From Pelomyxa schiedti (taxonomy: Eukaryota; Protista; Evosea), in assembly GCA_020536535.1 (NCBI GenBank), contig JAHLWZ010000788.1:1-34757 (forward strand): DNA of 34,757 bases, written 5' to 3'. The notes under the pieces are model-generated. The model did not search any database. It had not been told where the DNA came from and worked only from the letters and a program-made list of their open reading frames with translations. The translations under genes and the position numbers were made by a program. Positions 3,182-34,041 of this stretch are shown here, in pieces; within the stretch, counting starts at the first letter, position 1, and the number at the start of each line of letters is the position of its first letter.

Positions 3182-4494
3182 TCAATCAATGTGGGCATAT
3201 ACAGCACCACTGTAAATGATCAGTCTCTTGAGGTTGTGCTTCTGAAGCATTTGGCGCAAGAAATAGAACTCACGCATTCTCATGCGGCGGTATTCGGGTG
3301 ACGGGTCTTGTATCTGAAAATCAATTAATTTAAGTTATATTTGTATAGAAAATTGCAATTTAATCAGTCTATTTAAAGGGGCACTGAGAGAATTACCTGC
3401 TTGTGGAATACTTTCACGTCATTGCATGTTGCTACACCAACACCGGCAAACTTGGCACGCAAAAAGAAGTCCTGATGCTCACCCAACTTGAGGCTGTCAT
3501 CCCACCTCAGCTTCTTCACCACGGCTGTACGCGCGAGGAAAAAGTTTGCCACAACATCAACTTTCTTGCACTCTGGCCCAAATCCAGGCACTGGGCCGTA
3601 GTCCCCGTACCTCATGCGTATCGCATCTCCTTCCACTCCAATCATTCCTAAATCAAGTTAAGGAATACAGTTGGGATATTTTGACCTTATTTACTGCCAA
3701 ATACTACTACTAATAATAATAACCACAGTTCGGCCACTATGCAAGGCACAAAAATTCACTTCACATCAGTAAATTGGTTACAGAATTGACAATAACTTCG
3801 AGGCACGAACCAAACCAGGCAAATGTAGTGACACACACACAACACACACAGACATGCGTACAGACAAGTACCCACCAGCATAATCGTAGAACTCTATCTC
3901 GGTTGTAAACAGCCCCCCGCTCACAATGTCCAAGTCGTCCCTCTTATCAAGCACCTCCATCAGCTTCTCTATCCTGGTGTCTTCCGTGAACACGAAGTCG
4001 TCGTCGAGCAGCGCGAAGTACTCTGTGCCGACGCGGTCCACGAGCGCGTTACGCGAAGCCGACAGCCCGGCGTCCCGCGGCATTCTCATAAACTCGGCGC
4101 CGGCCCGCGACGCGGCCGAGCGCGTGGACCGCGGCGAGGCGTCGTCGGGCTGCGCGGCCGGCGACAGCGGGCCGTCGTCGGCGACGATCACGCGGGCGCT
4201 GGGGTAGCGCGCCCTCAGCGAGACGAGGAGCTCCTCGACGCAGTCGGCGCGATCCAGCGTCTTGACTACGAACGTGACTTTCGAGTCGAACGCCGACATC
4301 GGTGTCGGCGGACTGACTGCGGCTTCTATCGTCGCAGGTGGCCGTGCGTCGTCGCGTCGGACGCCGGCGCACGCGTCGCCCTCGCAGGAACCAACTTGAT
4401 CGCCGCCATCGGCGCAGGCAAGTGGTGTCAGGAGCAGCACCAAATACAAATAGCACAGGGCGGCTATTGGCGCTTCGACACCCAACAGCTTCAT
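3182..4494 (-). CDS. Glycosyltransferase with GT-A (Glycos_transf_2) fold resembling the B4GALNT1/2 catalytic domain, N-terminal signal/anchor; 3 exons
   Basis: Motifs 'VTFVVKTLDR', 'VIVADDG', 'GLSASRNALV', 'LLDDDFVFTEDTRIEKL' (DxD), 'DVVANFFLART' and 'EHQDFFLR' parallel animal B4GALNT motifs. Hydrophobic N-terminus 'IAALCYLYLVLLLTPLACA'. Stop at 3182-3184. Confidence 0.85.
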
Positions 4495-4750
4495 TTTTTT
4501 AAATTCCGGAGCTGCGTCTTGTGATGGTTNNNNNNNNNNNNNNNNNNNNNNNNNNNNNNNNNNNNNNNNNNNNNNNNNNNNNNNNNNNNNNNNNNNNNNN
4601 NNNNNNNNNNNNNNNNNNNNNNNNNNNNNTCGGCGCAGGCAAGTGGTGTCAGGAGCAGCACCAAATACAAATAGCACAGGGCGGCTATTGGCGCTTCGAC
4701 ACCCAACAGCTTCATTTTTTTAAATTCCGGAGCTGCGTCTTGTGATGGTT
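4409..4750. other. 100-N scaffold gap (4530-4629) flanked by an identical 121-nt direct duplication (4409-4529 = 4630-4750); assembly overlap artefact
   Basis: The two flanks read identically base for base, so the contigs probably simply overlap. Confidence 0.9.
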
Positions 4751-4786: not shown

Positions 4787-7700
4787 TTACTCTGTGTTCA
4801 CCTCTTTGGACAGAAGTTGTACTAGTTCTTCAAAGGCTAGTATTTGGTTAGTACAGTCTTTAAAAAAAGGATTCTGGGTAGAAGGGATACATGGTCTAGC
4901 TGAGGGTTCTTGTGCCCAGCAAGATGTTATAATGGTAGCCTGCGGTGGTGGAATTCCTTCAGGAATAGCAAGTCTCTGGGAATTCATTAATTGGTTGCTG
5001 GTGGAGGCTTGGAGAAATGTACCTGGCCACTAATGGCATATTCTGCGATTTCTGAATATTGGGAATTAGTGTTGCAGGGAGGGAAAATGAAAAGAGATGG
5101 AACAACTCCAAGAAGAGGAAAACTCCTTTGTAGCATAAGGCTCTGTAGTTGATGAGATGGAATTTTATTGAATAGTAAGGGTCATACCTATCCCGGTGAA
5201 TACATAGTAGGCCAGAACACCAAAACTAGAACCGGGTGAAATGAAATGCAGGAGTGAGGGGAGGAACCTGTACACATCCGCTTTCAAGGAATAATTACCG
5301 TTGGTCATAGCCTGTTTTATTGTAAGATGAGATAAGAATTTCGGTACACAAACCTCAGGAGCCATATAGGTAGGGGTACCGACATTTGTGGTCATGTTTT
5401 GGGAACCATCGGAAACTTCTCGTGTTGTTCCAAAATCACTTATTTTGGCGCATACGGCGGCAGAGACTTCCAAGCTGGCAACCATAACATTTCCAGGTTT
5501 AAGGTCCCTGTGACTTTAAGAAATCTTCAAAGTAATCTGGCTGGATACCTATGCATTACGCCGCTTTGGTGCAGGAAGTTCATCCCTCTAGCGACGTCTC
5601 CTAATATCTTCAACTTTAAGGGGAGGCCCAGAGGCTGCTTTTTCAGAATGCCTTCCAAACTTCCGAGAGGCATGTATTCCTAAATACGCGTTAAAATGGT
5701 AGCAACCCCTTAGGTAAAGCATACAAGAAGAATGGCGAGTTTGGATTTAAAGTGCACAGCGCCAATAAAATTCACTATTTGGGGGCTGTGCATAGATTCC
5801 ATTGTCTGAACCTGTTCAGGTGGAGAGAGGAAAATTAGACAACAGATTTTTGAACGGATCGCCAACTTCTCTAGAAAATCCTTTATATAAATCCGCATAA
5901 GCCGTTCCTTGTGCTTTCAGTACCTAAAACTTAGCGTAAGCCATTTCTTCTCTAACGTGATTCTACCTTAATAGCTACATCTTGGCCTCTCCAGCTCCCT
6001 CTAGGAAGTGTAAGTACTAAGCGGAAATAAGAGAAGCTTGTACTTGAACACTGTGGAATATGTCCCTTCGCCAATTGGGGGCATTGCAAGGTTGATTTCA
6101 TCTGGGTCAATCTTGAACAAATTAGTGAATGGGCGAATTTTCCAGGACGCACTTTCATTGACAGTTTCGATTCAACTTTCATTTTCAAGTAAGTGTGCTG
6201 CATGTCACTTCCACTCAGAGAATCCCCTGTTGTTCCCGTTAGAGTTTTTCAACAGAAGAATCAACCTTTCGCAGCAGCCACAGTAACAAACGAGTCTATG
6301 CATGTTGTACAGTGGATGAGTGCTGAAATTACGATATCCATTTCAAATCCCTAGGTCTGACTTACTGATGAAGATAGATGTTTTGTATGGATACAGGTTG
6401 AAGAACAGACTCGACAGGATCAAAGGTTAATTTGTACTTATAGGTAGGCTGCTGGAAGAACTTGCAGAAGACAGGATTGTCAGTTGGATTCATAAGACTT
6501 ATTGTCTCTGTTATAGATTCTCCCACTGGTGCTCGGTGGGACTTGAGCCCAAATTTGAGTGCTGGTACAGATACCTAGGAAGCAAAGGTACAAAAAAAAA
6601 ACGGCTCAGCTGAATTTACCTTCACAATGAAGTCATCCAGTGGTACCTCTCTAAAGAAAGTAAGGACCATACAAAAGGTAAATCACAAACTTTGAAAGAG
6701 AGGCATCAAAGGTCTCAGTGCACTCGGACTCTCCTTCCACTCCTGGCCCCACAATAGTATCCATTGCGATTTCAGTTTCTGGTTTATTTTGGTTCCTTTT
6801 TTTTGTTGTTTGCGTTAAAGAGAGGTTACAAAAAAATCTACCTTTTGTACAAAAGAAGAAATGCTGCACAAAGAGCTCCAGCGGCAAGGAGACAGACCCC
6901 TCCTACACCAACACCTACACCAACTGCTAGAGCTGTATGAGAGGAACCTATTGAAAAGGGATCAGCCATCTGCTCTCGGAATATTTTCAAAATACCTGTG
7001 TGAAAACTCATTTTAACTGTTTCATTGATTATATTGCCTGAGAGGTCAGAGACTACGCCAGGGAGAAGCGTAACACTACAAGAAGAACCTTTGCCTTGCT
7101 TTTTCAAAGTAAGGGTGTACAACCGGTCATTGTTTGGCGCAACAGCGATAATGGAGCAACCCTTGCTGGAAAACGCGGAAACTGTAACCCCTCTCACAGA
7201 TTCACTGCATGAGAGCATTGGTGACCAAACACTAGAAGTGTCCTTAAACTCGCAATCGGGAGGAGTGATATCGATAAAGCTGAATTGACTATAGGGTGGA
7301 GATGTTTGCTTTTCCACAGTAACAGTAACAGACAGATTGCTACCAGTTCCCTTTCCAACGTAACAAGTAATTCGAGTATGAGGTTCGGGTATAGAGATAT
7401 TTTCACAGACGGTTGAGGCTTCTATTTGAACAGAAATGGCATCAACAAACTGACCAAAGTTCGTTCCTTGAAAAAGTCAGAAAGGAAGCAGATTATAATA
7501 ACAGTAATACCTGTGATATTTGTTGCACCTCCTTCAGTGGAGGCAGGAGTCATGCTCGCTATTACAGGACCTGGAGGAATGTGAGGTGCAACACGATTTT
7601 CCATACATATACCCTTGTAGTCAAACATGTACACAGTGGTAGTTTGCCCGTCTTGCGCAGGTAAAGTGACAACGATGCTATTATCTAAGCCAACACCTGA

Positions 7701-10700
7701 CGGTGCATCACAGGTAATGGCACTAGAATTTATAATCACAGCGTTTTGACAAGAGGTGCCTCCGATGCTAACAGCAGCACTGTAGTTCGAGGTGCACAAA
7801 TTATCCCCAACAATTGTAGTCGAACCCCCTCTTGTATCAACAGGGGTGGCAAGGAACACAGAAGGAGCTAAGAAGGCAGTGAGTACAAGAGAGAAACAAA
7901 TGGTGAGTACGGGAAAATGCAAAGACATTCTTCCGATCAGATTGACAGCCGACAGGACTGCAGGTTGCAGGTACAGTTACGTCAACTTGGTGTCCCATTC
8001 CACATCCAGGTGGAGGACGGCAGGATATTGTTGTATGGTCAATAACCGTAGCATTCAGACATTGCACAACGTTGTTGTAGTATGTGAGTTTCACTAGCAC
8101 AGGTGTATTTGCGGGTCCAAAATTTGCTCCTTTTATTGTTGTGTAGACCGTTCCCTTTGTGGGAACAGGAGTAGCGGAGAAAACTTGGGGTGCTGATAAA
8201 AAGTGAGTTTCAAACATTTACTGTAGGTAGAGTACGATTGTATGAAAATCTATCGAAGGTTCCTGTAAGATTGCCAACAGTTACCGTGATTAGAATTCCG
8301 GAGCCAACCCCGGCATTAACTACACAAGTGATCTTGGTACTTGAGACCAATTGAACATCGTTGCAAGGTGTCCCCCCTACGGAGACTGATAAGTTTCCTG
8401 GCGAGTAGAAATTGTTTCCGATGATCGTTATTAGGCCTCCAGTGGTGTCTATCGGAGACACGAAGCTTATAGCGGGACCTTCAATACCATTAGGTGAAAG
8501 AGAGTTCATAATATCACACCGGAGTAAATGTAAAAGTAATCAGCTCTCTGTGAATATGAGCCAGCAGGTACATATACAGACAATGAGCCCAACCACACTG
8601 AGCCAGGTGCAACATCACAAGAGAAGAGTACATCCTTGATGATGACTATGGCATCATTGCAGGTGAAAGATGTGTTGTAATCGAGGATAGCAAGAATTTT
8701 ATCTCCTTCATAGCCAAACCCAGAACCCCCTACAAAGAGGCGGAGGATGCCGTTTTGTTGTTGAGCTCGGTTGATGTACGTAATTTCTGGTTCTGGAAAA
8801 GAAAGTGAGAACGGAGTAGAAGGGATGAGGAAAACCAGTGTAATTCCAGTAAAATGTGTTGCTGATTTGACCCTCTACCCTGACTCTAACTTCGTGATGA
8901 CTTCCAACACCTGCACCACAGGGGCACAGTAGTGAAGTCTGGTTGTACCATGTTGCATCCACCCAAGTGCCGTTGTCAAGTGAGACTTGACATGAAAAGT
9001 CAATAGGTGGAGCGAAATTTATCCCCTAAGAGTAAGGAAGCAACCACTTCAAAAATTAACACAGAATAACCTCAATTAATTGTTTCATTGTTCCAACTGT
9101 TGGCACTGTGCTGACGCGGGTTATGCGAGGACCTGTAAAGGGTGAACAAATCAGAGGTAAGTTTTTTTTTGTTCAAACCAATATATGTCAGAATAGGGGC
9201 TTTCCCAATCTGTGAGGACCCTGATGGAACCTCCACTGTTATGACAGTATTCACTCCAGCACCAGCTGGAGCAACACATGTAATTTGCGTGTGGGCAACA
9301 GTAACAGTAGCATTGGCACATTCCAAAGAATTATACCCAATGTATACGGAAAGATCTTGAGTACCCAATGGGCCAAAATTATCTCCTTCAATGGTCAAAA
9401 TTCCGCCGAGAGTGCCAATTGTGGAAGCAGAATACAAAAGTGGTACTGAAAAATAAAGGTGAGCGAAGATTGATGTGTGGGCATAAGAATACATTCATAA
9501 GAAAACGTAGAGAAGACCACTTTGGCTCCTACAGTGTAAGGGCTGGGAACATAAAGAGCAAGAACAAGGTTAGACCCATGTCCCTCGGGTGCAACACATC
9601 TTATCTCCGTGTGGGCTTGCATAAGTGTTGCATTTACACATATTTTGTAGGTCCCGTTTAACATTATTTGTACAGAATCCAGTGAAAGCACTTTGCCAAA
9701 ATTGTTACCGGTAATGAAGATGTAACCCCCAGTTGTGTTTGTACTGCTTACTGTGTATATCACAGGGTCTGAAAAAGGAAAGCCCCTAGTGAGGTTCTAT
9801 GTTTAGATAATGAAACACTAACTTTGGTAGGTGAAGGAGCCATTGCAGGTCAGAGAATTGGTTGTAGAGGGAACACTGACAATCACTTTGGCAGAACCTA
9901 CTCCTTCTGGAGGAGTGCAAGTTATTTTTTTGTGGGCCACCACTAAATGAGCATTCAAGCACAGGCAGGAACTAGTGCCGCCTAGGCACTGCACTCCATT
10001 GCCACTGACCATCACGGAAATAGAGGTATTTAAAGGGCCAAAGTTTTCACCAGATATTGTGAGTTGGTCGGTGCCATTCGAACTTGGAGAAGTAATACTT
10101 GAGATCAAAGGACCTACATCTCAGGATAAGCACAAGTATCTGGAAAGAAGCGAGAACCATCATAGGAGAAATCAATTATGTTGGTGGACTGCCCACCAAC
10201 AATTGCTTGCAAGATATGGTGTGCGCCACTTCCTGCAGGGAGACAGGTCACGATGTGCTGGACAGATTGCCAGTGAGCAACTTGATTCTGCAAGTCAACA
10301 AGTACAAGAACACTCGTAGTTCCATCTGCTCCAAAGTTTGACCCCTATTAGAAGGTGAAAAATAATTCCCAAAGAAAGAATAAAGATACATATATAATAA
10401 TCGTACAGCTTCCTGATGTAGGGATATGCGATTTGATTGCCGTAATATTGGGTACTAGAAAGATTAATATTTGAAAAAGCTGGTACGGAGAGAACCATTA
10501 TAAGAAAAGACTGGACTTGAGGTACAAATGGGGTGTGCTGGAACACAAACTTTCACAGTCTTATTTGTTCCAGCCCCAGATGGGGTGACAAGACATTTAA
10601 TTTGTTTGTGAGCATCTATCACACTGGCTCCTGAGCATGGAATTCCCGAAATATTGACTTCTACAGTTTGGTGGAGGGGGCCAAAATTCTTACCACTTAT

Positions 10701-13700
10701 GAGAGTGAATTCCTTTACATCCGTGGAGGTGGAAGTGGCTGTGTAGATTTCTGGTCCTAGGAGCAAATATGAAAACACAGAAGGTGATAAAACGAAAAGA
10801 ATACCATTATAGGAGAATGTGCTGGCACTAATTTGTCCTGTTATTCCAAGTGGAACCGTCAGTGTCAGTGCATGGGAAGAACCACATCCCTCCCCCACAA
10901 TACATCGAATCTCTGAGTGTGGGATTGTTACACTTGCATTCTCACATGAATGATTGCCAATTGACACAGAAACCAGTGTCTCAGAGCCACCAAAGTTTTG
11001 CCCTGTTATAACAACAGGACCCCCAATAGTGTCCACTGATGACACTGTTGATATCTCTGGTCCCTTGTACGAAAAAGCGGCATTGGCAGTAATCCGACTC
11101 ATAGATGGCACATATATAACTACAATATGCCCTGTTCCAACTCCAGCGTTCACAATACATTTGATCTCCTCATGTGGGCATGTCACATTAGCATATAGGC
11201 ATTCGTAGCTGTTGTTACAGCATGAAAGGCAGGGGCACACAAAGACAGAAACTTGGGTTCCAAGGGGACCAAAATTTTTTCCAGTCACCACAAGCGGCTC
11301 CATCCCATTTGTACTCACTGAAGGAACACTTGTTATGGAAGGGACTAAAAGGACTTAGAGAGTGTAGTGAATCATAAGAACTTACTTTGGTAGCTGTAAA
11401 TGAAAGCGGAACTGCACTGTCCGGAAACACAAACAATAATGCTGTTGTTTCCGGCACCCTCTGGAAATAGGCACTTAATAACAGTGTTGCTAATCCATGT
11501 TGAATCCGAGGTTTGGTTGTTAATGATAGAAGTGATATTGGTGCTGGAAGTTCCAAAGAAGTCACCCTCCTCAGAGTGAGAAAGAAAAGTACAAATAGGT
11601 TCACATACATAAACGAAATGGTTGCTGTATCCAGCCGTTCCCGTTGTTGGGACAAGTGGTACTAGTAAAATTTTGGGAACTGAAGAAAAATTAAAGTTAC
11701 ACCTGGAAAAATAGAAACCACCTTGATACGAGAAAACACTAGCTTTTCCGCACTGAGTGCCAACAAATACCTCAACAAGCAAATGCTCACCAACTCCAGC
11801 AGGAGCGCTACAGCTTATTTGCTGGTGTGATGTTATAACTTTGGCACCAGAGCATTCCTTTCCAGCCACTCTAACTGTGACAGGAGTGTTTATTGGGCCG
11901 AAATTGTCACCTGTGATATTGATATCTGAGCCTGTCGTACTTCCTAACGTTGCATTGAATATAACAGGACCTGTGGTAATATTAATTGAGTGGATAGAGT
12001 ATTACCAAAGTACCGTTATAAGAAAAAGCAGGTGTCCCAACTGAGCGGAGGGATTCCACAGAAACTTGTATTGACAAGTTTGTGCCATATCCAGGGGGAG
12101 CATTACAGGAAATTTGAGTATGCTCAACTAAAAGTTGTGGATTCGTGCAGTTGGAACTTCCAATTGTGACTGAGAGTCTTGAACCATTGATACCAAAATT
12201 GTCACCATTGATTGTTATTACTCCACCACAGGTATTAACAAGAGACGAACCAAGTACGATGGGATCTATTTTATTATCAGGATTGATCGTTCTCTGAGTG
12301 GCAAAAAAACCTGCGTAGCGCAAGATGCCTGACCCTTGCTGGGAAGTATTAGTGGGAACTGTTACGCGCACTTGGATATTAGCTCCAGCACCAGGAGGTG
12401 CCAAGCAAGTGATTTGTGAATGCGGAATGGTAACTTGTGCCGCACTACAAGGTACCCAGTTTGTGTGTATCTGAACATCAACAGATACAGATGTGTTAAG
12501 ATCACAGAAATTCAAGCCGGTAATGTTAAGAAGAGAGCCACTAGTTTTAGGGCGCGTTGTGCTGACTATACCAGGTGCTGTGAAGGATTTAGATAAAGGG
12601 TCAAGTTGAGGGGGTATACCAGAATAGTTGTAGAAAGAACTATTGCTTTGTTGTGAAGCAACACGTACAGAAATATTGTGGTATAAACCGCACCCCGCCG
12701 GAATGAAGGCACCAAGTAATGTATGACTTAAATACAGAGCCGTGTGCCAGGTTACTCCATCAGTTGTAGTTTCTAGCGTGTTCTTTGTTTTTGAGGTTCC
12801 AAAGTTATCTCCCTGCTATTGGTAAAAACGATGGTAAAAGATGACCAAATAACTGATATACGGGATCCTGCACTCCCTTCTGTAGGAGCAGTTTGCAAAA
12901 CTTTTATTATATACGGACCTAACAACATTAGTAGAGCGGAGAGAGAAGCCAACAACTGTACCCTTGTAAGAAAATACTGCTCTTGAAACTGCTTGAGAAT
13001 TTGAAAGTGAGCTTGGTACTCTGACTTCGAGTGTGTGATTTGTGCCTTACGTCATGTGAGTCAAAGGTATTTTATATTTGCTATTCATACCTGCACCGGG
13101 TGGGGCAGTACAAGTTATCTTTTTATGTGGTACCACAATGGATGGGGATGTGCAAGGGATACCCTGGACAGAAACCAGTACAGAGGTGCCGTTTGGGCCA
13201 AAGTTTGAACCCCATATTTCAATCAAACCTCCAATAGTGTTTACTTGAGATACGGAACTTATGGTAGGTTCTGTACATTGTAAGTCCAAATGGGAGTTTG
13301 CAGGACTTTCTACCTTCATACGCAAAGACATGTGATCCAAAGGAGAAATTTCCGGATTTAACTTGAACAGCCAAATCTTTCCCGGCTCCTGGCTGGACTG
13401 TGCAATTAATTTCGGTGTCGTTCTTCAGTATCACTGCATGGTAGCATGGCTTGTTGTTGATTGTGACCTGGACTGGTGTCCCAATCTTCCCCATGTTCTC
13501 ACCATATATGGTAGTATTGCCTCCTTCTGTTGAACATGGAGTACAATTGAAGACAGAAGACTCTGATAGTAACTATCAGACTTTTGAACCAAAAAGGAAC
13601 AAGTACCAGCGTAATCAAAAATGTTTGCCGTGCTCGATTGGGCATGTTCACCATTAGCAGGTACAGTGACATTAACGGTTTTGTCATATCCAATGCCAGG

Positions 13701-16700
13701 AGGAGGGCCACAATTAAACATCAGATGTGGAATGATGAAGACCACATGTTTACATGGCTGTCCGTCAATTGTCACAGAAAGATCTGCTTCATTAGCCCCG
13801 AAATTCTCTCCGGTAATATTTGTTGTTGACATGAACATTTCAGAAGTCGAAGTTATGATAGGGGCTGTGGTGAGTAAGTTGGCACTTACTCAATACGTGG
13901 AAGCACACCATTGTATGAAAAGATATCTCGTGTTGTTGTGAGTCCAGCCACATTGACATAAACATCTACGTTTTTCCCAACACCAGTAGGTGCCGTACAA
14001 GTAATTTCTCTATGAGAAGCAGAAACAAAAGGAGAGGAGCATGTTTTTCCACCAATCATAACATCCACTGTAGTGCCTAGAGCACCAAAGTTTTTCCCGG
14101 CGATTTCAATAAGTCCGCCTTTTGTGTTAACACTGGTGGCATAGGTCAGGGTTGGTGCTAAAAGCAGTAAGAAGATATTTTTACTGAGAGGAAAGAATGC
14201 CTTCATATGAGAAATCACATGTTGAAGAAACAGCACTTGCACCAGAAGGTACCTTAATTTCGACTCTGTTGTGTGGGCCAACACCTGGTGGTGGATAGCA
14301 TGAAATTTGCTGATGTGCAATGGACACTTGGGCAGCTCGACAGGAAAGATTCTTATCCATAAAGAAAACTGATACTGGTGTCCCCACATTACCAAAATTC
14401 TGGCCGCGAATAGTAACAAGTGACAGGCCATCAGTGGCAGCACCATAAACTGAAGTAATCGTCGCAGCTTAGGCAAAATTACTAATAGGGAAAGGGGGAA
14501 GAAGTACTTACCACTGTAACTAAAAGGCACCGAGGCTGTGCATTTACCCTGTACACATATCTTGACAGAGTGATTTGTTCCTGAGCCAGATGGAACTGAG
14601 CAAATTATGTGTGTATAGTTCACAATTTGGGCATATGATGCCGAACTATCCACGTAAAAGTTGATGGAGGTACTGGGAAGCCCAAAGTTTTTGCCCTTTG
14701 AGGTCTAAGTAGTATTCTAGAGTAATTTTGTGCCTTACCTGAATAAGAACTGTTGTAGAACCAGCAGTTGGAACAGAGGGGATGACGGATACCAAAGGAC
14801 CTGAAGGAGCATGAATTTCTTGTGTTTTACTGTGGATTACAAACTGCTGTAATTGAAAACCGAGCCTGTTCCAGATAAAGCAGTATCTGTGGAGGGGACA
14901 TGAACTGTGACTGCTAATTTTGTCCCTACTCCTACTGGGGCGATGCAATCTACCCTTGTGTGGTCTTGAATAACTGTAGCACTGGTACATTTCACTCCAC
15001 CAATTTCTACACTGATTTGCGTTCCAACAGCACCAAAGTTGGTTCCCGAGATGGTAGTATGTGAAATTCCATCTCCATCGGCGGCTGTTGCACTGACAAC
15101 CACAGGGCCTAAAAAAAAAAGGAATCAGAAAACGTAAGAATTGGAATGGGAAGCGCTTACTGCTGTAGGAAAATATACTGGCAGAATACACTCTGAGACT
15201 ACGACTTGTGCTTGGGTAGACTTCCAATGAGACAGGTAACTGTCCTCCAACGCCACTTGGTGCGGTACAAACAGCTTTGAAATGAGCAACAGTAACATGA
15301 GCATTGGCACAGTCAATATTATTCACATATATTTTCAATGGAGTTCCTATGGGGCCAAAATTCGAACCAGATACAGTGATATTTCCCCCTGAAGTGCCAA
15401 TTTTGGAGACATCTGACATAATTGGAGCTACAAGAATAAGATGGAATGAATTAGTGGTTGTTTCAACCATTGTAGCTGAAAAAGAAGAAGTAGGCCGTTT
15501 GCCAAAGAGTTCCAACTTGGAGAGTCAGAGTAAGTATGTTTCCTTTCCCAGCACATTGCGGAGGATAAAAAGCAACTTTGTTGTGGGCTTCTGTTACATT
15601 TGCAGGCACACAAACAGTACCAGTAACTGTATTATTAAGACATACAGTTATCACTTGCCCTCCATTAATGGCTCCAAAGTTACTTCCAGTTAAAATGGAG
15701 CGAGCTACCCCAGTTGTATCTACTGATGTAGCGGATGTTATGGCAGGTCCTAAAAGAAAGAGTCAATAGTATTCAAACTCTCGGCAAGTTTACCTTTATA
15801 GTTGAATATGGTTGCTGAGGCACTTTGTGAGTTGAGCGCAGGAGGTGGCGGAATTGTAACAACAACAGGAAGATTAAATCCCACTCCAGCAGGAGCTTGG
15901 CATGTGATCTTTGTGTGGTTTTGCACCACTACACATAGAGAACTGCAAGCTCTCCCGCCAATACTAACAGAAGCAGTAGTGCCAATAACACCGAAATTGT
16001 ACCCTGTGATATCGACACTTGAACCAGAAGTATCAGACTGCGTCACAGAGAAAATTTTGGGCTCTAGAGTAATATTAAAAAATCATTTTTCTCATAGTAC
16101 GCACGATTGTACAGAAACTGGGAATATGAGGCTGATGCATTTAAACTTGGAAATGAGACTTTGAGTGTATGATTTGTCCCTACACCCTGGGGAGGATAGC
16201 AAGTTATTTGTGTGTATGCAGTCACCACTGTGGCACTGGAGCAAGGAAGATTGTCAATTGTGACTATGACTGGAGCTGTTGTATTTCCAAAATTTCTTCC
16301 AGTTATGGTGATTTTACTTCGGCCATCAGTATTTCCAGGTGTCACAGTCTGAATAAATGGAGCTATGGGGAGATGAGTATGTTGTGCCATTTTAGAGAGG
16401 AAAACCTTGGTAGAAATACCGCTTGATGTTGCTTGTTTGTCCACAAACTTTGACAACGCAAGAGTACCCACCAGAAAAGAAACATTTCATAGCAGTGACA
16501 TTCACTGGGAACCCTGATGTCCAGGATATTCCTCCATCAGAGGAGCACAATATGTCCTGTGTTACTGTTTTTGGGGCGAAGCCATATCCCTTTTCAATTA
16601 TGAGAAAAGCCAATGAATCAGTAGGGAGCAGGAACTGTTATTGTAGCGTATGAAAATCCTGGTGCAGGGATGGAGGGAACAGTATCGATCATTGGGGCTG

Positions 16701-19058
16701 TTTTATGTTCACTTAATAGGTTGCACAGTGGGGCACTTACGAGAATAAGAAAAGACAGAAGCATAAGAGTATTGGCCTATTGCAGCAGGTATCCACACCT
16801 GGACAAGTTGATTTGTACCGGCACCATCTGGAACGGTGCACCGTATTGTTGTGTGATTGATAACACTCTGACTTGAGCAAGATAATCCCCCAATTTTTAC
16901 AGTTGTTGTTGTGCCTGCAGGACCAAAATTCGTGCCTTTGATGTACGTTATGGCGCTTGGGTAAGCAGGGGATGCGGATTGCACCATGGGGCCTATCAGG
17001 AACATGAGTCTCAAGGAAAGAATGGAGGCTATGCAACCATAATAGGAGAACACATTGGCAGAACCAGTCTGTAGACCAATTGTAACTTCAATAGAGTTAT
17101 TTACTCCCTTCCCTTGTGGTGCAGTGCATGTGATTTTGTTGACTGCTGTTACAGTTGCAGGGTAGCAGTCAGAACCACCAATCTTCACAGTAGCTGTGGG
17201 AAGATAGGTGCTCCAGCCAAAATAATTCCCTGTGATTTCAGTACTACCACCAGATGTGCCAACAGGTAGAGCAGATAACACAATTGGGGCTAAATGTAAT
17301 ATGAGTGGCACACTATACAGTTGGATCATACCCCAAAAACTAAAAGTAAAACTGGCGAAATTGATTGTTGACAATGGAGGAACCCTCACCACCAGTGAAT
17401 GTAATGTGCCCCAAGGATAGACAGGTTTACAGACAATTCTAGTGTGTAACACTTCAAAAGATACTGATCCACAAGTCACTTCATCTATCTTCACACCCAC
17501 ACTTGCAGTAGAAACTCCAAAGTTGGAGCCAGTTATCCTTAACCACGTCTCTCCACTACTCAGAAAAGGAACTGCAGATACAATAGTCGGGGCTGGAAAA
17601 AGTATATTAACCCTATTTTAATTATTTTGATGTTAAACCTGAGTAGGAGAAGGCATTTAGAACAGAGCCGACATCTGTTGAAGATGAGGTTGGCCATACA
17701 GACACATTCAATCCCGTCCCAATGCCTGCCCTGGTAACGCATGTGATTGTTGTTTGGTTTATCACGGATGGAAAGTCACAGTATTGGCCACCAATGGTAA
17801 CAGAAAGTGAAGTTCCGGTGGGTCCAAAACCACTTCCACTTATTGTTGTAAGACCTCCCTTCGTCGGTGTTGATGTGGCTCGAGTAACTGAAGGGGCCAA
17901 AAACTTAAACCACACGTAGTTCGTGCTGTCAACACCTCTGCAAGTAGCCACAACTCTGTACCAAGCTCCAGGTGTGCCTGGCTAGGAATATTTAGTAGTC
18001 AGAAGAAAGCAACAGTTCAGAGAGACCATACCGGCATAGTGCACGACAGCTTGGAAGAGTTGTGTACGGTGATATCGGTACAAGACATGCTGCCGACCAT
18101 AACTTTGCCGCAGGGGGCGAGCCAAGTACCTGAAACAAAAATCCTGCCTCCAGAGGCTTGCACAAGAGTAACGGCTGAAATAACAGTTCCTGTTAAAGAA
18201 GTCACTCCAAGATGTAAATCAGAAAATAAGTACTGCAGATTCCACTGTCACAAAATGAGGCGTAATTGCTGTACACCTTTACATAGGTACCGGCATCAAC
18301 CTCGTACCACCCTGTGTCACCAAGTCCAGACCAGTACAACTTTACATAGTTGTACCAGTTTCCGACACAGGTGGCAGTGGTAAAATTGGCTGAAAAATAG
18401 ATATACCGATAGGTATCAAAGTACATGAGAGGTGTTTGCAGAGTGACGTAGCCACCAGGTGTGCAGTAATAACTATCTGCATGCTGTGAAAAGTGTACCA
18501 GATGAAAACGATACTTCCATACAAATGGTAGTGCTTGTTGTGAATGCCGACAAAGAGCCTGAAGCAGTATAGATTGTGATGGCACCATCCATAGTTGTTG
18601 TATTTAAATAAAACATAAGAGATCGTAGTGCTGGTCCTTGTGTGGGTGGTATCTGAAACATACAGTCAAACGTTACGTAATGAAAGAGATAGTCTCATCA
18701 CACACTATGATGGCACCACGCATTTCGTAACAACGTCTAGACGTAGTTGTGGTTTGAGACAAGACGTCGTCAATTGGGCAAGGATAACAGTGGGCCATTG
18801 CACTGTCCAGATTACATTGTCCGTATAGCCCCCAAGAGACACTCTGTCCAGATTGTCCTCTTTCAATATATCTTGGAAATTTTTATTCAAGTCACAGAAA
18901 GGAAAAAAAAGAGAGAAAGTGACGAAGTACCCATATGCCCCACTGGAACAAGTTGTGCTACCAAGGCATAAGAAATCGTACGATACACCGTACTCACAGA
19001 GGCACCCAATCACAATGCAAACTACTGCAATGATGCCATGCACATTTAACCTCGCCAT
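4787..19058 (-). CDS. Giant single-pass transmembrane receptor kinase (roughly 3,900-4,000 aa estimated, about 55 short introns): signal peptide, N-terminal domain, ~35 IPT/TIG domains, Ig-like stalk, TM, cytosolic Ig-like domain, TKL-type kinase
   Basis: Signal peptide 'MARLNVHGIIAVVCIVIGCLC'. Repeats of the form 'P.I..v....t.GG.itI.G.NFG......V.igg..C....v...H..I.C..P.G.G....V.V.V.......FSY'. TM 'ALAVGVGVGVGGVCLLAAGALCAAFLLLYKR' (~6848-6934). The spliced kinase reads 'IGEGTYSTVFKGSWRGQDVAIK', 'MHRDLKPGNV', 'KISDFGTTR', 'VGTPTYMAPE', 'CWAQEPSARP'. Stop at 4787. Confidence 0.9.
7280..18190 (-). repeat. Tandem array of ~35 diverged IPT/TIG domain units (~300 nt period including intron)
   Basis: Hand count of G.NFG / C..P.G.G / FSY units. 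The repeat is evident at protein level only; the nucleotide copies are highly diverged. Confidence 0.85.
14158..14200 (-). other. Predicted 43-nt GC-AG intron at an IPT domain boundary
   Basis: 'TTC TCA TAT GAA G|gcattc...cttttag|CA CCA ACC' gives FSYE-APT in the same phase-1 position as the other boundary introns. The only GT in the interval gives the wrong frame. Confidence 0.65.
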
Positions 19059-19490: not shown

Positions 19491-20927
19491 TTACAAGGCA
19501 ATCAACCGGGTTGGCTGCGTGAGCAATCCTCTAATTTGAGAAGTGAGTGTGGAAAAAAATGAAAGGCCATGCAACATGTACCTTGGGATGTCCCGCAACT
19601 CCTTTTGGATGCAAAGATATTCTCCAAGTGAGCAGGTTATTATCACACATATAACATTTAGAATCCACCACAGCGGACAGCATAGTGGAATAACACCAGA
19701 AATAAGGACGCATGCTACCATGTGGATGCCTTGCATTGTGCAGGAGAAGTCCTGGATTAGGTTAACAACCGATGAAGAGAATTCCAGTATAGTACCAAGC
19801 ATTTACGCTGGTTTCCTACAGCATACATCAAACAAAAGGCACTGGAAGAGAAATTAGATAAAGGGAACATTGTTGTGGTTTGTGTTTTCTTACCTCGCCA
19901 CGGAATTTATCAAAAACGACAATGTAGCCACTACCCCAGATAATGTATTAAGCCGAATGTAGTGCGGCGAGAACACCATATTAACGGCCACGGTTCCGTG
20001 TCTTTCCACATCCTCCCAAGAGCTTCTAGATGTGCTTGCACTTGAAGAAAACGAAGAGTCGCCGTCAAGCGAAGAATAAGAAGAAGCCGAGCCAGCCGGA
20101 TCAGAATCCCCCCCGCTCAAGAGGTGATCGTCTTCCGCCCTAGCCGAGTGTAGCCCACCACCAGCAGCAGCAGCAGCATAACCGGCGGCCATCAGCTGCC
20201 CCCCCAGGCCGCTCAGAGGCGCGGATTCCATCTCGCTCAGCACTACCGCGGTCCTTGCCTGGTACGAAGAAGGTAGCAGCACGAGGCTCAGCGCGAACAT
20301 GGTCGGCACCAGGAACGCGTAGAACGCCGCCTGCACGAACACAATCTGCGCGACGATCATTACGGGGTCCCACGCCCCAACCGTGCAACTCGTGTGCTGC
20401 CTCTTCTGCCTGTCAATGTCACTCTCCCCCCTCAGCGCCCCGCCGCCTTTCTCCCCAACACCATCGCCAACGCCAACGCCAACGCCAACGCCATCGCCAT
20501 CACCATCACCGGGAGTCATCATCATCGTCGCGATCGTAGCCATTGTCATCATCCCATTATTACTGTCGTTGCCGCCGTAGTGGTGGTACTGAGTCGTTGG
20601 CCGGTAGTCGATGTCGCCGTTGGCGTTCACGAATGTCGTTACGGTCGGCGGTGTTGGTGTTGAGGCGTAAGTGGCTGTGCTTGTATTTTCACAATGGAAC
20701 GATGATGACGATGATGATGTGCTGGTGGTTGTTGTTGTTGTTGTCGGTGTTGGCGTCAGTGGGACGTCGCTGTACTCGAAGTCGTCGCCGTCGTTCATAA
20801 CTATCACCACTGTGCCTGCGTGTACATGATTACATTTTGGGGTCTCTGTGCGTAATTAGGGGATGATACCTTCACGTGCTGCTGCTGCTGTGCCATTCCC
20901 GATCCCGTTCCCCCCTCGTTGCTTCAT
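19491..20927 (-). CDS. SYS1: SYS1 homolog (Golgi membrane receptor for Arl3/ARFRP1) with long low-complexity N-terminus; 5 exons
   Basis: 'WDPVMIVAQIVFVQAAFY', 'SFLINSVA|SAFCLMYAVGNQRKCL|DFSCTMQGIH' and 'WWILNVICVIITCSLGEYLCIQKELRDIP' match the SYS1 consensus. A first exon 'MKQRGG...AREG' splices in frame. Confidence 0.88.
20461..20510. repeat. Imperfect hexamer microsatellite (GCCAAC/GCCATC)n inside SYS1, encoding GDGDGDGVGVGVGVGDG
   Basis: Directly visible: 'ccatcgccaacgccaacgccaacgccaacgccatcgccatcaccatcacc'. Confidence 0.8.
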
Positions 20928-21020: not shown

Positions 21021-24000
21021 TCAGTGATGGTGATGGTGCTGTTGTTGTTGTTGTTGTGCAGGCGCAGGAGGAGGCGGAGGGGGCAGGCTGAGGGCCAGTG
21101 CCAGTTCCTGCTCAGAGTAGTTTGCGGATGCGCCAGACGAATCGGGGTTGTGGGACAGGTGGTACTCGTTGTAGTCGAGGCACATGGCGAGGTGGGCCAT
21201 GCCGGGGTTGCCGCCCCTCCGCGTGTGCAGCGTGGTCAGGAGCTGCCTCAGCGACGTGTTGTAGCTGTCGGCCAGGTTGCTGAGCGTGGCCAGGGTCGTC
21301 ACCCCGTGCTGCGTGCTCATGTACTGCGTGACAAGCTGCGAGTTCCGCGTCAGAACCCGCGATGCTGCTGTTGATGATGTTGATGTTGATGCGGGGTTGG
21401 TGGTGGTGGTGGATGGGCCTTGTGGGGCTGGGTGGCGGGCCCCGGGGGCTCCGGGTGGGAGTGGTTGTTGTGTATTGGTTGTGGAAAGTGGTGGCACCCC
21501 TGTGGGAGAATTAGTGGGTTTGGTTTTTTTAAATTCGGAATTTTAAATAGTTCAATATTAGGTAAAAGAATTAGGGAAGAAGTGATTGCGGGGGACTGCT
21601 CACCGGGGAGTGTTGAGGACTTGGCTGTGCTGATGGCTGATCGGAGCTCGCGGGAAAGGGAGTCGGCGTGCTTGGCGAACTTGAGGCAGTGAGCAACTAG
21701 CCGCGTTACGATCTTGACGAGATGTGGGTCGGTGAGGTTGCACTGGACGAGGCAGGTGTCCAAGAAGTCGTTGTGTAGTTGTATAACTTCATCAACGGTA
21801 GAAGCGGTACTGTTTATTTGTTGTATGAATTTGTGCCAGTTCGGCTCCAAAACCTGTGATTGTGGAACTGAGTAATTCGGTGTTTACCCGCGTTCATTAC
21901 CTCGTATACAATGAAAAAGAGGAAATTCTGGAGTAAGTGTATCATCTGTTGTCTCAGGGTGTGAATTTTGTGAAGGCCGGACCCTTGGCCCTTGATTCTA
22001 TTGAAGGATGAGCTTCCCATACAAAAAACCCAGCTCACATACGCCATCAGGTTCACCCAGGAAGAGTTTAGACATCTCTCTACATGCTTGAGCATAAACA
22101 AATGCCTGAAGATGAACTGATACTTTGCGATGGCACTGTTGTTGATTACCAGTGAAAGAGGAAACTTGACCAAAAAGTCAAGAGTAAAAGCTTCTAACCC
22201 TGGGGCAAAGTGAGTTCGGTACCGCTATTTGGGTTTTTGTACCAGATATTTTCTCAGATTGGGGAAGGGAATCACCACTCCGAAGCTGGACAACCCCCTT
22301 CGAATCGACATGAAGCACACTTAATAGCATATTAATGTTGCTGTAAGGAAGCAAGTCACATTGAAGGTTGTCTCGAAATGGATCAGATTCTGGATTCATG
22401 GTGAAAAAAGGAAAATGAAGAAAGAATTTGATATAAAGTCCATAAATAGTACTTGCCAGCAGCAGAAGACCGGAGTGAGAGTTCTAATAGAGCATCCAAC
22501 TTTGACTGTTGAATATCACGATAATTTTTTCTCAGCTCTTCCTCAGCGGTGTCCATGAAATGAACCAAAAAGTCCCCCTAGATTACATTTGTGAATGATC
22601 CCTCCACTTATGTGAAATAGAACCTGAGCAAGAAGGAAATACGATTTGATAGACTTAAGGCAAGCCAAGAGTTTGTGCTTATGCATGAGAAGATTTAACA
22701 ATGATTTACTTGCAAATGAAAATCTGGGAGGAATGTTTAACTTGTTTGTCGTTTTTAACGTCATACGTTTTGTTAATTATTTCGGCGTAGCTGCAGCTAT
22801 TTGGGGAATAAACCAGTTGCTCCAGATCGTTGTATTTGATTGCCTCGCCACATTCTCTTATAACATTTAATTGCTTCCCAGTTGTGAGTATCTTTTCTTT
22901 CCATTCGGCTAAGAAGTCTTTTGTTTCCCTTATTAAGTGCACAAGAAATGATAGTTTTATTACAGACCGGGAACCATCACCTCACAAATGGAAAATTGTT
23001 GCACAAATTCAAGTGTAGACAGTACTTGCTGCTCAGACGGATTTTGGAGCCGCTGTTCCACAAAAAATTCGTGGAATGGATCATCCACCAGCCCTTCACA
23101 GATCCACTGCTTCACAAAGTTCTGGAAGGAAAATATGAGCAGTGCCAAATAATCATGTACCCGCACCAAATATGGAACAGAAGCTTGTTGCATTAAAAAT
23201 AAGAAAAGTTTGTCCGAGCACTCATCACCGCCTTGTGTTACCCAAAGTCGACTTATTACATTCAACAAACTGCCTCCTCGAGCTTTCTTGGCAGTTGCTT
23301 CCTGGATATGGGGTGAGAGCTGTAAGAAGAGAAAGAGTAAGTTACCTCTGCGAGCATATTCAATAAACTTAGCGTATGAAGTGAATCGTGCAGATAAAAC
23401 ATCATCTTTTGCAGGGTGAGAGCACCTTGCCTCAGTTCGTGCTCCAGTTGCGCAATAAGTACACAATACTGCCTTCAATGTGAGCGATAAACCTCTGAAT
23501 GTGGGGTTACCTTTAGCAACAATTGGTCAATTGCTGCAGCAAGTGCATGGCACACCAAACCACAGTGGTACCATTGACTTGCAGAGCAAAACTGACGAAC
23601 AGAGACATAGAATACACCGCAAGGAAGAATGCGATCGACTAATGAGCGGATCCCAATGTCGGTACTGTCATCAACCTGAAGTTTATTGTTAGGGATGTTA
23701 CAGAGCCTTGTGGCATAGAACACCTCAAAAGAGAGTTTAAGTTTTCCTCGGGGGTGTTGTGCATCACTATGTAATACGCCCCGAATATAACTTCCCTCTA
23801 TTCCAACTAGAACATACAACAAATCACCCATTATCAGCAACTCCTGTGGAGCCGAAAATGAGAAAGTGAGAGTACGAAAAACATACTTACTTGAGATTGT
23901 AATGGAATTCCTTTCAGGGAAGGGGCCACCTGCGCACTCGAGTGTACAGCCGGGAAAAAATCTGCTTTTACAAAGTCACCCGTTATATTGCTCCTCGTGA

Positions 24001-33941: not shown

Positions 33942-34041
33942 NNNNNNNNNNNNNNNNNNNNNNNNNNNNNNNNNNNNNNNNNNNNNNNNNNNNNNNNNNN
34001 NNNNNNNNNNNNNNNNNNNNNNNNNNNNNNNNNNNNNNNNN
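33942..34041. other. 100-N scaffold gap
   Basis: Run of 100 N. Confidence 0.98.

What the first reader, a model, noticed from the sequence alone, without database searches (positions are those of the whole stretch)
4787..19058. Giant receptor kinase fusing a Tgr-like array of ~35 IPT/TIG domains to an Entamoeba-TMK-type cytoplasmic module
Seen: signal peptide, ~35 IPT/TIG units (most with a Cys pair), one TM helix, a cytosolic beta-rich segment ('LKFGLKSHRAPVGESITETISLMNP...KYKLTFDP...LIHCTT...VESKLSMKIDPDE') and a kinase with intact VAIK, HRDLKPGN, DFG and APE. Known: IPT/TIG ectodomains characterise the Dictyostelium TgrB1/TgrC1 allorecognition/adhesion proteins, which have few such domains and no kinase. 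Entamoeba transmembrane kinases carry a similar juxtamembrane domain plus TKL kinase, but mostly Cys-rich (CXXC) ectodomains. Inference: this is a long-reach surface receptor, potentially >100 nm if extended, that could span a glycocalyx and signal directly on contact with kin, prey or symbionts. It is a candidate undescribed recognition system.
Basis: partly seen in the sequence, partly recalled or inferred. Interest (0 to 1): 0.8.

Follow-up and report, generated by a model that had tools for sequence, protein, structure and literature searches.

The report
Giant 35-TIG amoeba receptor kinase
This is a real, expressed gene of the anaerobic amoeba Pelomyxa schiedti for a very long single-pass receptor kinase: 35 Ig-like TIG domains outside the membrane, and inside it the same cytoplasmic module as the transmembrane kinases of the parasite Entamoeba. 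It is one of at least 14 similar genes in this genome.

Summary
On the minus strand, 19058 to 4787, lies one intron-rich gene of 57-64 exons with GT-AG introns of 39-61 nt, encoding about 3,800-3,900 aa. In order it encodes:
- a signal peptide;
- an unassigned Cys-containing tip of about 220 aa;
- 35 IPT/TIG units, most with the Cys pair;
- a bacterial-type Ig-like membrane-proximal domain;
- one TM helix;
- a cytosolic ASH/MSP (PapD-like) beta-sandwich;
- an intact TKL kinase.

Spliced single-cell RNA contigs join the kinase, the TM helix and the last TIG exons. The genome is Pelomyxa schiedti (Archamoebae).

At least 13 paralogous loci keep the same order of parts. Some are annotated in GenBank as 'tyrosine protein kinase' of 1,300-4,700 aa. 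Mastigella eilhardi has TIG versions with 8-11 TIG units. Entamoeba TMK-type kinases share the ASH-plus-kinase module, and the kinases form one clade (98/92).

Its claim that amoebozoan TIG proteins lack kinases is not: Dictyostelium rk3/VSK3 is a TIG-TM-TKL kinase.

Verdict: a new variant of a known kind. The function (contact or particle sensing) is inferred.

This scan had already reported the same family on other contigs of this genome.

The parts
4787..19058 (-). Whole coding region of the receptor kinase gene (ATG at 19058, stop codon ends at 4787). 57 exons in my model, up to 64 if the probable in-frame introns are real.
   Evidence: Open segments; splice model; RNA joints and contigs for 4787-10700.
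18996..19058 (-). Signal peptide (MARLNVHGIIAVVCIVIGCLC).
   Evidence: Read from exon 1. Hydrophobic core after a basic residue. No predictor was run.
18234..18995 (-). N-terminal 'tip', about 200 aa after the signal peptide (exons 1-4). It contains Cys residues and its fold is not assigned. The splice junctions here have no RNA check.
   Evidence: No Pfam, PDB or Atlas match. Exon 4 has relatives only at C847:52339-52557(-) and C218:40693-40929(-).
7276..18189 (-). Array of 35 IPT/TIG units. Most occupy one exon each, bounded by phase-1 introns. Seven units of a second subtype (positions 6, 12, 18, 22, 26, 30, 35) are split before the G-x-N-F-G motif.
   Evidence: Pfam TIG; own-genome PF01833 scan; exon-wise HMM count; unit list.
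6997..7284 (-). Membrane-proximal extracellular Ig-like beta-sandwich of bacterial S-layer/Big type. It is conserved in TIG-type paralogues and in Mastigella.
   Evidence: Weak DUF7933/Big_12 matches; alignment A3; model with pLDDT 93; Foldseek hits to the TssM Ig domain and SbsB/SbsC, TM 0.63-0.69.
6842..6947 (-). Exon 40, holding the single transmembrane helix (ALAVGVGVGVGGVCLLAAGALCAAFLLLY), followed by basic residues.
   Evidence: Exon borders fit the RNA contig lengths.
6620..6795 (-). Acidic cytosolic linker (exons 41-42).
   Evidence: RNA joints at 6651-6690 and 6575-6619.
6153..6574 (-). Cytosolic juxtamembrane ASH/MSP (PapD-like) beta-sandwich (exons 43-45). It runs straight into the kinase glycine loop.
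   Evidence: Profile A1 hits Hydin, FAP81 and FAP65. Atlas gives PF22544. Paralogue P0016 passes the Pfam MSP cut-off. The model of paralogue P0004:3118-3255 (pLDDT 86.6) matches OCRL1 ASH, Hydin, CEP192 and VAP. Window exons 43-46 are colinear with P0004 3128-3262.
4787..6111 (-). TKL-type protein kinase domain in 12 small exons (46-57). The glycine loop, VAIK, HRDLKPGN, DFG and APE are all intact.
   Evidence: Pfam on exons; RNA-supported introns; motifs read.
7571..7612 (-). In-frame, stop-free 42-nt intron inside my 'exon 38', which the gene model read through.
   Evidence: The RNA contig holds 315 nt where the model has 357.

Best explanation
The stretch is one expressed gene of Pelomyxa schiedti. 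It encodes a type I transmembrane receptor-like kinase of the archamoebal 'TMK-type' family.

Outside the membrane it carries a tip of unknown fold, a rod of 35 tandem IPT/TIG domains and a bacterial-type Ig-like domain next to the membrane. Inside it carries an ASH/MSP-fold beta-sandwich fused directly to a catalytically intact TKL kinase.

Shown here: the gene structure, the domain order, expression and splicing across the TIG-TM-kinase junction, the paralogous family, and the common descent of the cytoplasmic module with Entamoeba TMK-type kinases.

Inferred mechanism: the tip, the rod or both bind a ligand on a particle, a cell or the matrix. Clustering then brings the kinase domains together for trans-phosphorylation. 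The ASH/MSP domain, a fold that binds Rab GTPases in OCRL1 and FFAT peptides in VAP, recruits or positions a cytosolic partner. The output feeds adhesion, phagocytosis or vesicle traffic, as reported for Entamoeba PATMK and Dictyostelium VSK3.
For: - Open frame and Pfam TIG/kinase domains.
- Splice model of 57 exons with no stop.
- Spliced RNA contigs X1 record 1 (2,545 nt) and X2 record 3 (2,111 nt) run from the kinase exons through the TM exon into TIG exons up to 8192. Their lengths fit the model.
- 35 TIG units.
- 13 colinear paralogous loci.
- Organism and annotated paralogues identified, and the genome paper gives the same 52.4 Mb in 5,337 scaffolds.
- Paralogue architectures from Pfam.
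- ASH/MSP fold of the juxtamembrane domain.
- Entamoeba proteins share the module.
- One kinase clade with 98/92 support.
- Functional analogies from the literature: PATMK (PMC2211552) and VSK3 (PMC2064856).
Against: - No ligand, localisation, kinase activity or binding partner is known for any member of this family in Pelomyxa.
- RNA support was examined only for 4787-10700. The 5' two thirds rest on the open frame, splice signals and colinearity with paralogues.
- The model between 12813 and 12960 (exons 22-24) is uncertain.
- The juxtamembrane fold and the kinase tree were obtained with paralogues, chiefly P0004 (57-65% identical in the matching exons), not with the window's own joined protein.
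- A search of proteins of 1,930-6,140 aa did not return the window's own product, so it may not be annotated as one protein.
- The HRDLKPGN loop is of the Ser/Thr type, so the GenBank label 'tyrosine kinase' is not established.
Confidence: 0.78

Rival explanations
1. The protein sits not on the cell surface but in endosomal, phagosomal or symbiont-holding vacuole membranes, with the TIG rod facing the lumen. There it reports on vacuole contents and controls maturation, as Dictyostelium VSK3 does. This differs from the best explanation only in place of action.
For: VSK3 (signal peptide, TIG, TM, TKL kinase) is on late endosomes and lysosomes with its N-terminus in the lumen (PMC2064856). PATMK was found in early phagosomes (PMC2211552). 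The closest structural match of the juxtamembrane domain is the Rab8-binding ASH domain of OCRL1. P. schiedti houses prokaryotic symbionts (PMC10579272, abstract listed).
Against: A rod of 35 domains is much longer than seems needed inside a vacuole. There are no localisation data. Homology of the kinase to VSK3 was not tested here.
Confidence: 0.3
2. The family is a self/non-self or kin recognition system like Dictyostelium TgrB1/TgrC1. The polymorphic ectodomains would bind each other in trans and the kinase would report the match.
For: There are TIG ectodomains as in Tgr proteins and many paralogues. Two of them lie head to head on contig C847. The ectodomains are less conserved than the kinase (40-50% against 60-65% identity to P0004).
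Against: There are no population data. Tgr proteins have no kinase and few TIG domains. Faster divergence of ectodomains is usual for any receptor family. Earlier follow-ups in this scan found no evidence that the head-to-head pair recognise each other (unchecked by me).
Confidence: 0.1
3. The rod is mainly structural: a glycocalyx or adhesion filament. The kinase would act as a tension or attachment sensor rather than a ligand-specific receptor.
For: The rod has 35 tandem Ig-like domains, many N-glycosylation sequons and an S-layer-like Ig domain at its base. Long TIG arrays occur in non-kinase surface proteins such as fibrocystin (my own knowledge).
Against: A distinct tip domain, shared with only two paralogues, suggests specific binding. 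The same cytoplasmic module sits on LRR and Cys-rich ectodomains, which is typical of ligand receptors.
Confidence: 0.15
4. Two separate genes (a TIG adhesin and a kinase), a pseudogene, or an assembly chimera were read as one gene.
For: The contig comes from a single-cell assembly with N gaps. The window's product was not found as one long protein. One RNA contig retains two introns.
Against: Spliced RNA contigs cross the TIG-TM-kinase junction. No stop codon occurs in 57 exons. Thirteen loci have the same order of parts. Single complete ORFs with TIG plus kinase occur in an independent Mastigella transcriptome.
Confidence: 0.03

Closest known systems
Entamoeba histolytica transmembrane kinases (TMK family, e.g. 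PATMK, EhTMKB1-9)
   Same: Both have a signal peptide, a single TM helix and a cytosolic TKL-like kinase. The ASH/MSP-like juxtamembrane domain lies at the same distance from the kinase. The kinases fall in one clade. Both organisms are Archamoebae.
   Different: The TMK ectodomains described so far are Cys-rich CXXC repeats (PMC2211552). Here the ectodomain is a 35-TIG rod with a separate tip and an Ig-like base, and the protein is three to four times longer.
Dictyostelium discoideum rk3/VSK3 (TKL group, DRK family)
   Same: It is an amoebozoan protein with signal peptide, extracellular or luminal TIG domain, one TM helix and a C-terminal TKL kinase (PMC1420674, PMC2064856).
   Different: It has one TIG domain against 35. 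Whether it has the ASH/MSP juxtamembrane domain, or is orthologous in its kinase, was not tested. It resides on late endosomes and lysosomes.
Metazoan MET/RON receptor tyrosine kinases and plexins
   Same: They have IPT/TIG domains in the stalk of a single-pass receptor, with a kinase (MET/RON) inside the cell.
   Different: They have Sema and PSI domains and only 3-4 IPT domains, and the kinase belongs to the TK group (my own knowledge). Here the catalytic loop is HRDLKPGN and the nearest kinases outside the family are Raf-like CTR1/EDR1. No Sema or PSI domain was found.
Dictyostelium TgrB1/TgrC1 allorecognition proteins
   Same: They are amoebozoan single-pass surface proteins with IPT/TIG ectodomains.
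   Different: Homology of the TIG units to Tgr proteins was not tested.
Fibrocystin (PKHD1) and PKHD1L1
   Same: They are very long single-pass proteins whose ectodomain holds many tandem IPT/TIG domains (my own knowledge).
   Different: They have no kinase, they carry G8/PbH1 parts, and they are metazoan or ciliary. This is an analogy of form only.

Membership tests
Archamoebal TMK-type receptor kinases (Entamoeba TMK sensu lato) | Type I topology: signal peptide, one TM helix, C-terminal cytosolic kinase | tested here: met
   Exons 1, 40 and 46-57; RNA contigs across the TM exon.
Archamoebal TMK-type receptor kinases (Entamoeba TMK sensu lato) | Kinase belongs to the same clade as Entamoeba TMK kinases | tested here: met
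   Pelomyxa TIG-type paralogues, including the closest one (P0004), group with Entamoeba P0145, P0048, P0052 and P0076 at 98/92, apart from CTR1/EDR1, Roco, MLK and LRRK2. The window's own joined kinase was not put in the tree. Its exons are 63-65% identical to P0004.
Archamoebal TMK-type receptor kinases (Entamoeba TMK sensu lato) | Conserved juxtamembrane domain directly upstream of the kinase | tested here: met
   Profile A1 matches P0145 at residues 652-708 (hhalign E 4.8e-5). It also matches Entamoeba P0048, P0052 and P0076 in the representative search. Alignment A2.
Archamoebal TMK-type receptor kinases (Entamoeba TMK sensu lato) | [quoted passage not shown] | tested here: not met
   The ectodomain is a TIG array. 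TIG-type paralogues have 0-4 CXXC motifs and 2-3% Cys, against 6-8.6% Cys in the Entamoeba proteins.
Dictyostelium DRK-family receptor kinases (rk3/VSK3) | Extracellular TIG domain + TM helix + TKL kinase | tested here: met
   The architecture is met. Description of rk3 in PMC1420674.
Dictyostelium DRK-family receptor kinases (rk3/VSK3) | Kinase orthologous to the DRK family | not tested
None was identified among the named hits.
MET/RON receptor tyrosine kinases | TK-group kinase (HRDLAARN-type catalytic loop) with a Sema-PSI head | tested here: not met
   The catalytic loop is HRDLKPGN. No Sema or PSI domain in Pfam scans of the N-terminal exons.
TgrB1/TgrC1 allorecognition proteins | TIG ectodomain with a short non-catalytic tail, in a polymorphic linked gene pair | tested here: not met
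   A full kinase is present. The window holds no partner gene of this type. Polymorphism is not testable here.
ASH/MSP (PapD-like) domains | Seven- to eight-stranded Ig-like sandwich with sequence or structure similarity to MSP, VAP, Hydin or OCRL ASH | tested here: met
   Window exon 43 profile against Hydin, E 5.4e-6. Atlas PF22544 at 0.95. Paralogue model against OCRL1 ASH, Hydin, CEP192 and VAP at probability 1.00, TM 0.55-0.66. P0016 scores 27.2 bits against the MSP cut-off of 25.9.

The most novel reading that the evidence does not exclude
The Pelomyxa/Mastigella TIG-rod kinases would be a long-reach, contact-dependent recognition system. Interchangeable tips on rods of fixed length would let the amoeba tell prey, partners or its own prokaryotic symbionts apart. 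They would signal through a kinase governed by an ASH/MSP domain, a regulatory arrangement also used by the TMKs of pathogenic Entamoeba and, as far as I could find, not described there.
Probability: 0.15. Interest if true: 0.8.

Novelty: new variant of a known kind. Interest (0 to 1): 0.5.

Why it matters
Receptor kinases of unicellular eukaryotes are few and poorly understood. Two amoebozoan examples have been studied: the Entamoeba TMKs, tied to phagocytosis and virulence, and Dictyostelium VSK3, tied to phagosome maturation.

This gene shows that free-living relatives of Entamoeba put the same cytoplasmic signalling module on a completely different and extremely long ectodomain. It also shows that the module includes a conserved ASH/MSP-fold domain next to the kinase. 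That domain gives a concrete, testable handle (partner binding, kinase regulation) for the whole family, the parasite's TMKs included.

The 35-domain rod, which would reach roughly 100 nm or more if extended (an inference from typical Ig-domain size), raises the question of what a single cell needs to sense at that distance.

Tried and rejected
- Plus-strand reading: no long open frames.
- First splice model with a flat intron penalty stopped early at 6650 and missed short exons. It was replaced by a model with splice-site matrices plus RNA-fixed 3' exons.
- Pfam on the tip exons, the juxtamembrane exons and the divergent TIG unit 6: nothing significant.
- Tip domain: the Atlas features search was weak (0.80). 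The PDB profile search gave only E 1.3. Pfam on the tips of two paralogues found nothing.
- A kinase exon against PDB gave only generic kinase hits (CHK2, LRRK2, Roco4), which is not informative for class.
- Literature searches found nothing on TIG-array kinases in Amoebozoa or Archamoebae, or on an MSP/ASH domain in TMKs. The P. schiedti and M. balamuthi genome papers do not treat these genes.
- The window's own product did not appear among proteins of 1,930-6,140 aa.
- Whether Dictyostelium VSK proteins share the juxtamembrane domain could not be settled, because no VSK sequence was obtainable by name.
- The two-gene, pseudogene and chimera readings were rejected (see rivals).


Full report
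**Where the gene is**

The plus strand of 4787-19058 has no long open frame. The minus strand has a chain of open segments that change frame every 100-900 nt. Pfam finds IPT/TIG (PF01833) on nearly all of the upstream segments. It finds PK_Tyr_Ser-Thr/Pkinase on three downstream ones. The finding is therefore a minus-strand, intron-rich eukaryotic gene.

**RNA evidence**

Three single-cell RNA runs from one study hold 21-62% of the sampled words of 4787-10700. One further run, whose kind is not on record, holds all of them. Laid on the stretch, the RNA contigs are spliced at GT-AG introns of 40-55 nt.

- X1 record 1 (2,545 nt) and X2 record 3 (2,111 nt) run from the last kinase exons through the juxtamembrane exons and the TM exon into TIG exons, as far as 8192. 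The TIG array and the kinase are thus on one spliced RNA. These are assembled contigs, not single reads.
- Other contigs cover 8263-10700 and run beyond it.
- One contig retains two introns that another has spliced out (10345-10389 and 10455-10495). This fits pre-mRNA in the library.

**Gene model**

I wrote a small dynamic-programming gene finder using codon log-odds, donor and acceptor matrices trained on RNA-confirmed introns, and an intron-length prior. I fixed the last five exons by the RNA joints. The result:

- 57 exons and 3,905 aa.
- The contig-length arithmetic agrees with the model between 5678 and 7465, including a 39-nt intron at 6227-6265.
- The same arithmetic shows that a 42-nt in-frame, stop-free intron (7571-7612) was read through by the model.
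- Six more candidates of the same kind lie at TIG borders.
- The true product is therefore about 3,800-3,900 aa from up to 64 exons.
- The stretch 12813-12960 (exons 22-24) is uncertain, as are the unverified junctions of exons 1-4.

The joined translation was made only inside scripts, to fix frames and find the stop. All searches of the window's gene were done exon by exon, by reference. Where a contiguous protein was needed I used stored paralogues and say so.

**Anatomy, from N to C terminus**

- A signal peptide.
- About 200 aa of Cys-containing 'tip' without any family match.
- 35 TIG units, 34 significant against a self-built HMM and one divergent. By a strict pattern 28 of 35 carry the C-x(9-20)-[ILVM]-x-C pair, and they hold many N-x-S/T sequons.
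- A 96-aa membrane-proximal domain. Its model (pLDDT 93) is an Ig-like sandwich nearest to the TssM Ig domain and the S-layer proteins SbsB/SbsC.
- One TM helix followed by basic residues.
- An acidic linker.
- A juxtamembrane domain of about 125 aa.
- A kinase with glycine loop, VAIK, HRDLKPGN, DFG, APE, DVYSFG and the CW...RP motif. It is an intact kinase of TKL flavour with a Ser/Thr-type catalytic loop.

**The juxtamembrane domain**

- A profile of exon 43 and its eleven paralogous exons (A1) matches Hydin, FAP81, FAP65 and CFAP74 in the PDB sequence set (E 5e-6 for Hydin).
- The Atlas features search gives HYDIN_VesB_CFA65-like Ig clusters at 0.95.
- Paralogue P0016 passes the Pfam MSP gathering score in this segment.
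- An AlphaFold model of the closest paralogue's segment (P0004:3118-3255 with alignment A2; pLDDT 86.6) matches several known folds at Foldseek probability 1.00: the Rab8-binding ASH domain of OCRL1, Hydin and CEP192 PapD-like domains, and MSP/VAP domains.
- Window exons 43-46 align colinearly to P0004 3128-3262 at 35-64% identity.

A strongly conserved motif (ESKLSxKLDPxEI...PPIGEG) links it directly to the kinase glycine loop.

**Organism and family**

- The genome handle has 52.4 Mb in 5,337 contigs.
- Proteins found with the A1 profile are GenBank entries of Pelomyxa schiedti, on contigs whose lengths equal those of this assembly.
- The genome paper gives the same 52.4 Mb and 5,337 scaffolds and a density of 7.4 introns per gene. 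It does not discuss kinases.
- Within the genome, the kinase exon, the juxtamembrane exon and PF01833 hit the same contigs in the same order.
- I fetched 13 loci. All are colinear with the window's exons 39-56.
- Annotated members range from 1,323 to 4,705 aa, with 10-33 TIG units by my HMM.
- The same cytoplasmic module also sits behind LRR ectodomains (P0016, P0064, P0144) and unassigned ones.

**Relatives elsewhere**

- The exhaustive profile search found 138 proteins at E<=1e-3.
- TIG + ASH + kinase occurs outside Pelomyxa in the Mastigella eilhardi transcriptome (P0247, P0020, P0041, P0114; 1,750-2,020 aa). It also occurs in one unnamed ENA metagenome protein (P0131; 1,064 aa, 3 TIG units).
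- ASH + kinase behind Cys-rich ectodomains occurs in Entamoeba histolytica, E. nuttalli, E. dispar and E. invadens (P0145, P0048, P0052, P0076).
- Beyond these, only the kinase aligns (64% coverage), best to plant CTR1/EDR1/SIS8 Raf-like TKLs.
- In a PMSF tree of 46 kinase domains, the Pelomyxa, Mastigella and Entamoeba proteins form one clade (98/92). It excludes CTR1/EDR1, dictyostelid Roco, MLK, LRRK2, a Mastigamoeba cyclase-kinase and a Tritrichomonas kinase. Eight of the nine Pelomyxa TIG-type kinases group together (94/81), and P0004 is unresolved.
- Among proteins of 1,930-6,140 aa, giant TIG kinases came only from Pelomyxa and Mastigella. The window's own product was not listed.

**What is known**

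- Dictyostelium rk3/VSK3 is described as signal peptide, one TIG domain, one TM helix and a TKL kinase of the DRK family. It sits on late endosomes and lysosomes and is needed for phagosome maturation (PMC1420674, PMC2064856).
- Entamoeba TMKs are described as CXXC-rich ectodomain, TM helix and kinase. PATMK takes part in erythrophagocytosis (PMC2211552).
- I found no paper on TIG-array kinases in Archamoebae or on an MSP/ASH domain in TMKs. The library searched is limited to open-access papers and preprints.

**Reading**

The gene is a new, extreme variant (35 TIG units) of a known kind of amoebozoan receptor-like TKL kinase. It belongs by descent of its cytoplasmic module to the family that includes the Entamoeba TMKs.

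How it works is inferred. Ligand- or contact-driven clustering of the ectodomain would activate the kinase in trans, and the ASH/MSP domain would act as a partner-binding or regulatory element. The likely field of action, by analogy with PATMK and VSK3, is adhesion, particle uptake or vacuole maturation. Whether it acts at the surface or in vacuoles, and what the tip binds, is open.

**Earlier notes of this scan**

The same family was reported on other contigs of this genome, including two neighbouring genes with 35 TIG units in the same order and 'tips' said to have been exchanged with two relatives. Two of my own results fit this.

- The window's exons are colinear with P0004.
- The window's tip exon resembles the minus-strand gene of the C847 pair, while its cytoplasmic exons are closest to the plus-strand gene.

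The sugar-binding nature of the tip was not confirmed here.

Noticed in passing
window 7276-18189 (-): Seven TIG units (positions 6, 12, 18, 22, 26, 30, 35) are of a second subtype. They are split by an extra intron just before the G-x-N-F-G motif into an exon of about 62 nt and one of about 184 nt. They often carry a conserved Trp and lack the usual Cys spacing. Their spacing of 6, 6, 4, 4, 4, 5 units suggests a higher-order repeat in the rod.
   Followed up: partly
window 7571-7612, and candidates 17290-17331, 16993-17037, 12578-12619, 12266-12310, 11680-11718/21, 11570-11608/14 (-): These are introns whose length is a multiple of three and which hold no stop codon, so a gene finder reads through them. 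One is shown by RNA contig length. If retained, each would add a 13-15 aa linker between two TIG units.
   Followed up: partly
window 10345-10389 and 10455-10495 (-): One RNA contig (X1 record 2) keeps both introns, while another (X3 record 9) has them spliced out. This points to unspliced precursor or intron retention in the single-cell libraries.
   Followed up: no
window 18235-18474 (-) versus G000:C847:52339-52557 (-) and C218:40693-40929 (-): The tip exon has relatives in only two other genes. The closer one is the minus-strand member of the head-to-head pair on C847. The window's juxtamembrane and kinase exons are closest to the plus-strand member (P0004). This mosaic pattern fits an old exchange of tips.
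   Followed up: partly
window 4494-4719: A 100-N scaffold gap (4530-4629) is flanked on both sides by the same 30-codon sequence (minus-strand peptide KNEAVGCRSANSRPVLFVFGAAPDTTCLRR). This is probably an unresolved assembly overlap just downstream of the kinase gene. A second N gap lies at 33942-34041.
   Followed up: no
window 3781-4494 (-), 19893-20810 (-), 21353-21850 (-), 30005-32107 (-), 178-1068 (+): Open frames in the neighbouring DNA match family-2 glycosyltransferase, SYS1 and the gamma-tubulin complex C-terminal domain. Below Pfam's cut-offs they also match Roco COR-A and a protein kinase. None is a TIG or TMK-type gene.
   Followed up: partly
P0045 (GenBank KAH3760235.1, 1,360 aa): It is annotated 'bicyclomycin/multidrug efflux system' yet carries the ASH-like juxtamembrane segment and a kinase at residues 356-675. 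This is probably a merged gene model.
   Followed up: no
P0016, P0064, P0144 (Pelomyxa schiedti): The same ASH-plus-kinase module sits behind leucine-rich-repeat ectodomains. The cytoplasmic cassette has been combined with several unrelated ectodomains in this genome.
   Followed up: partly
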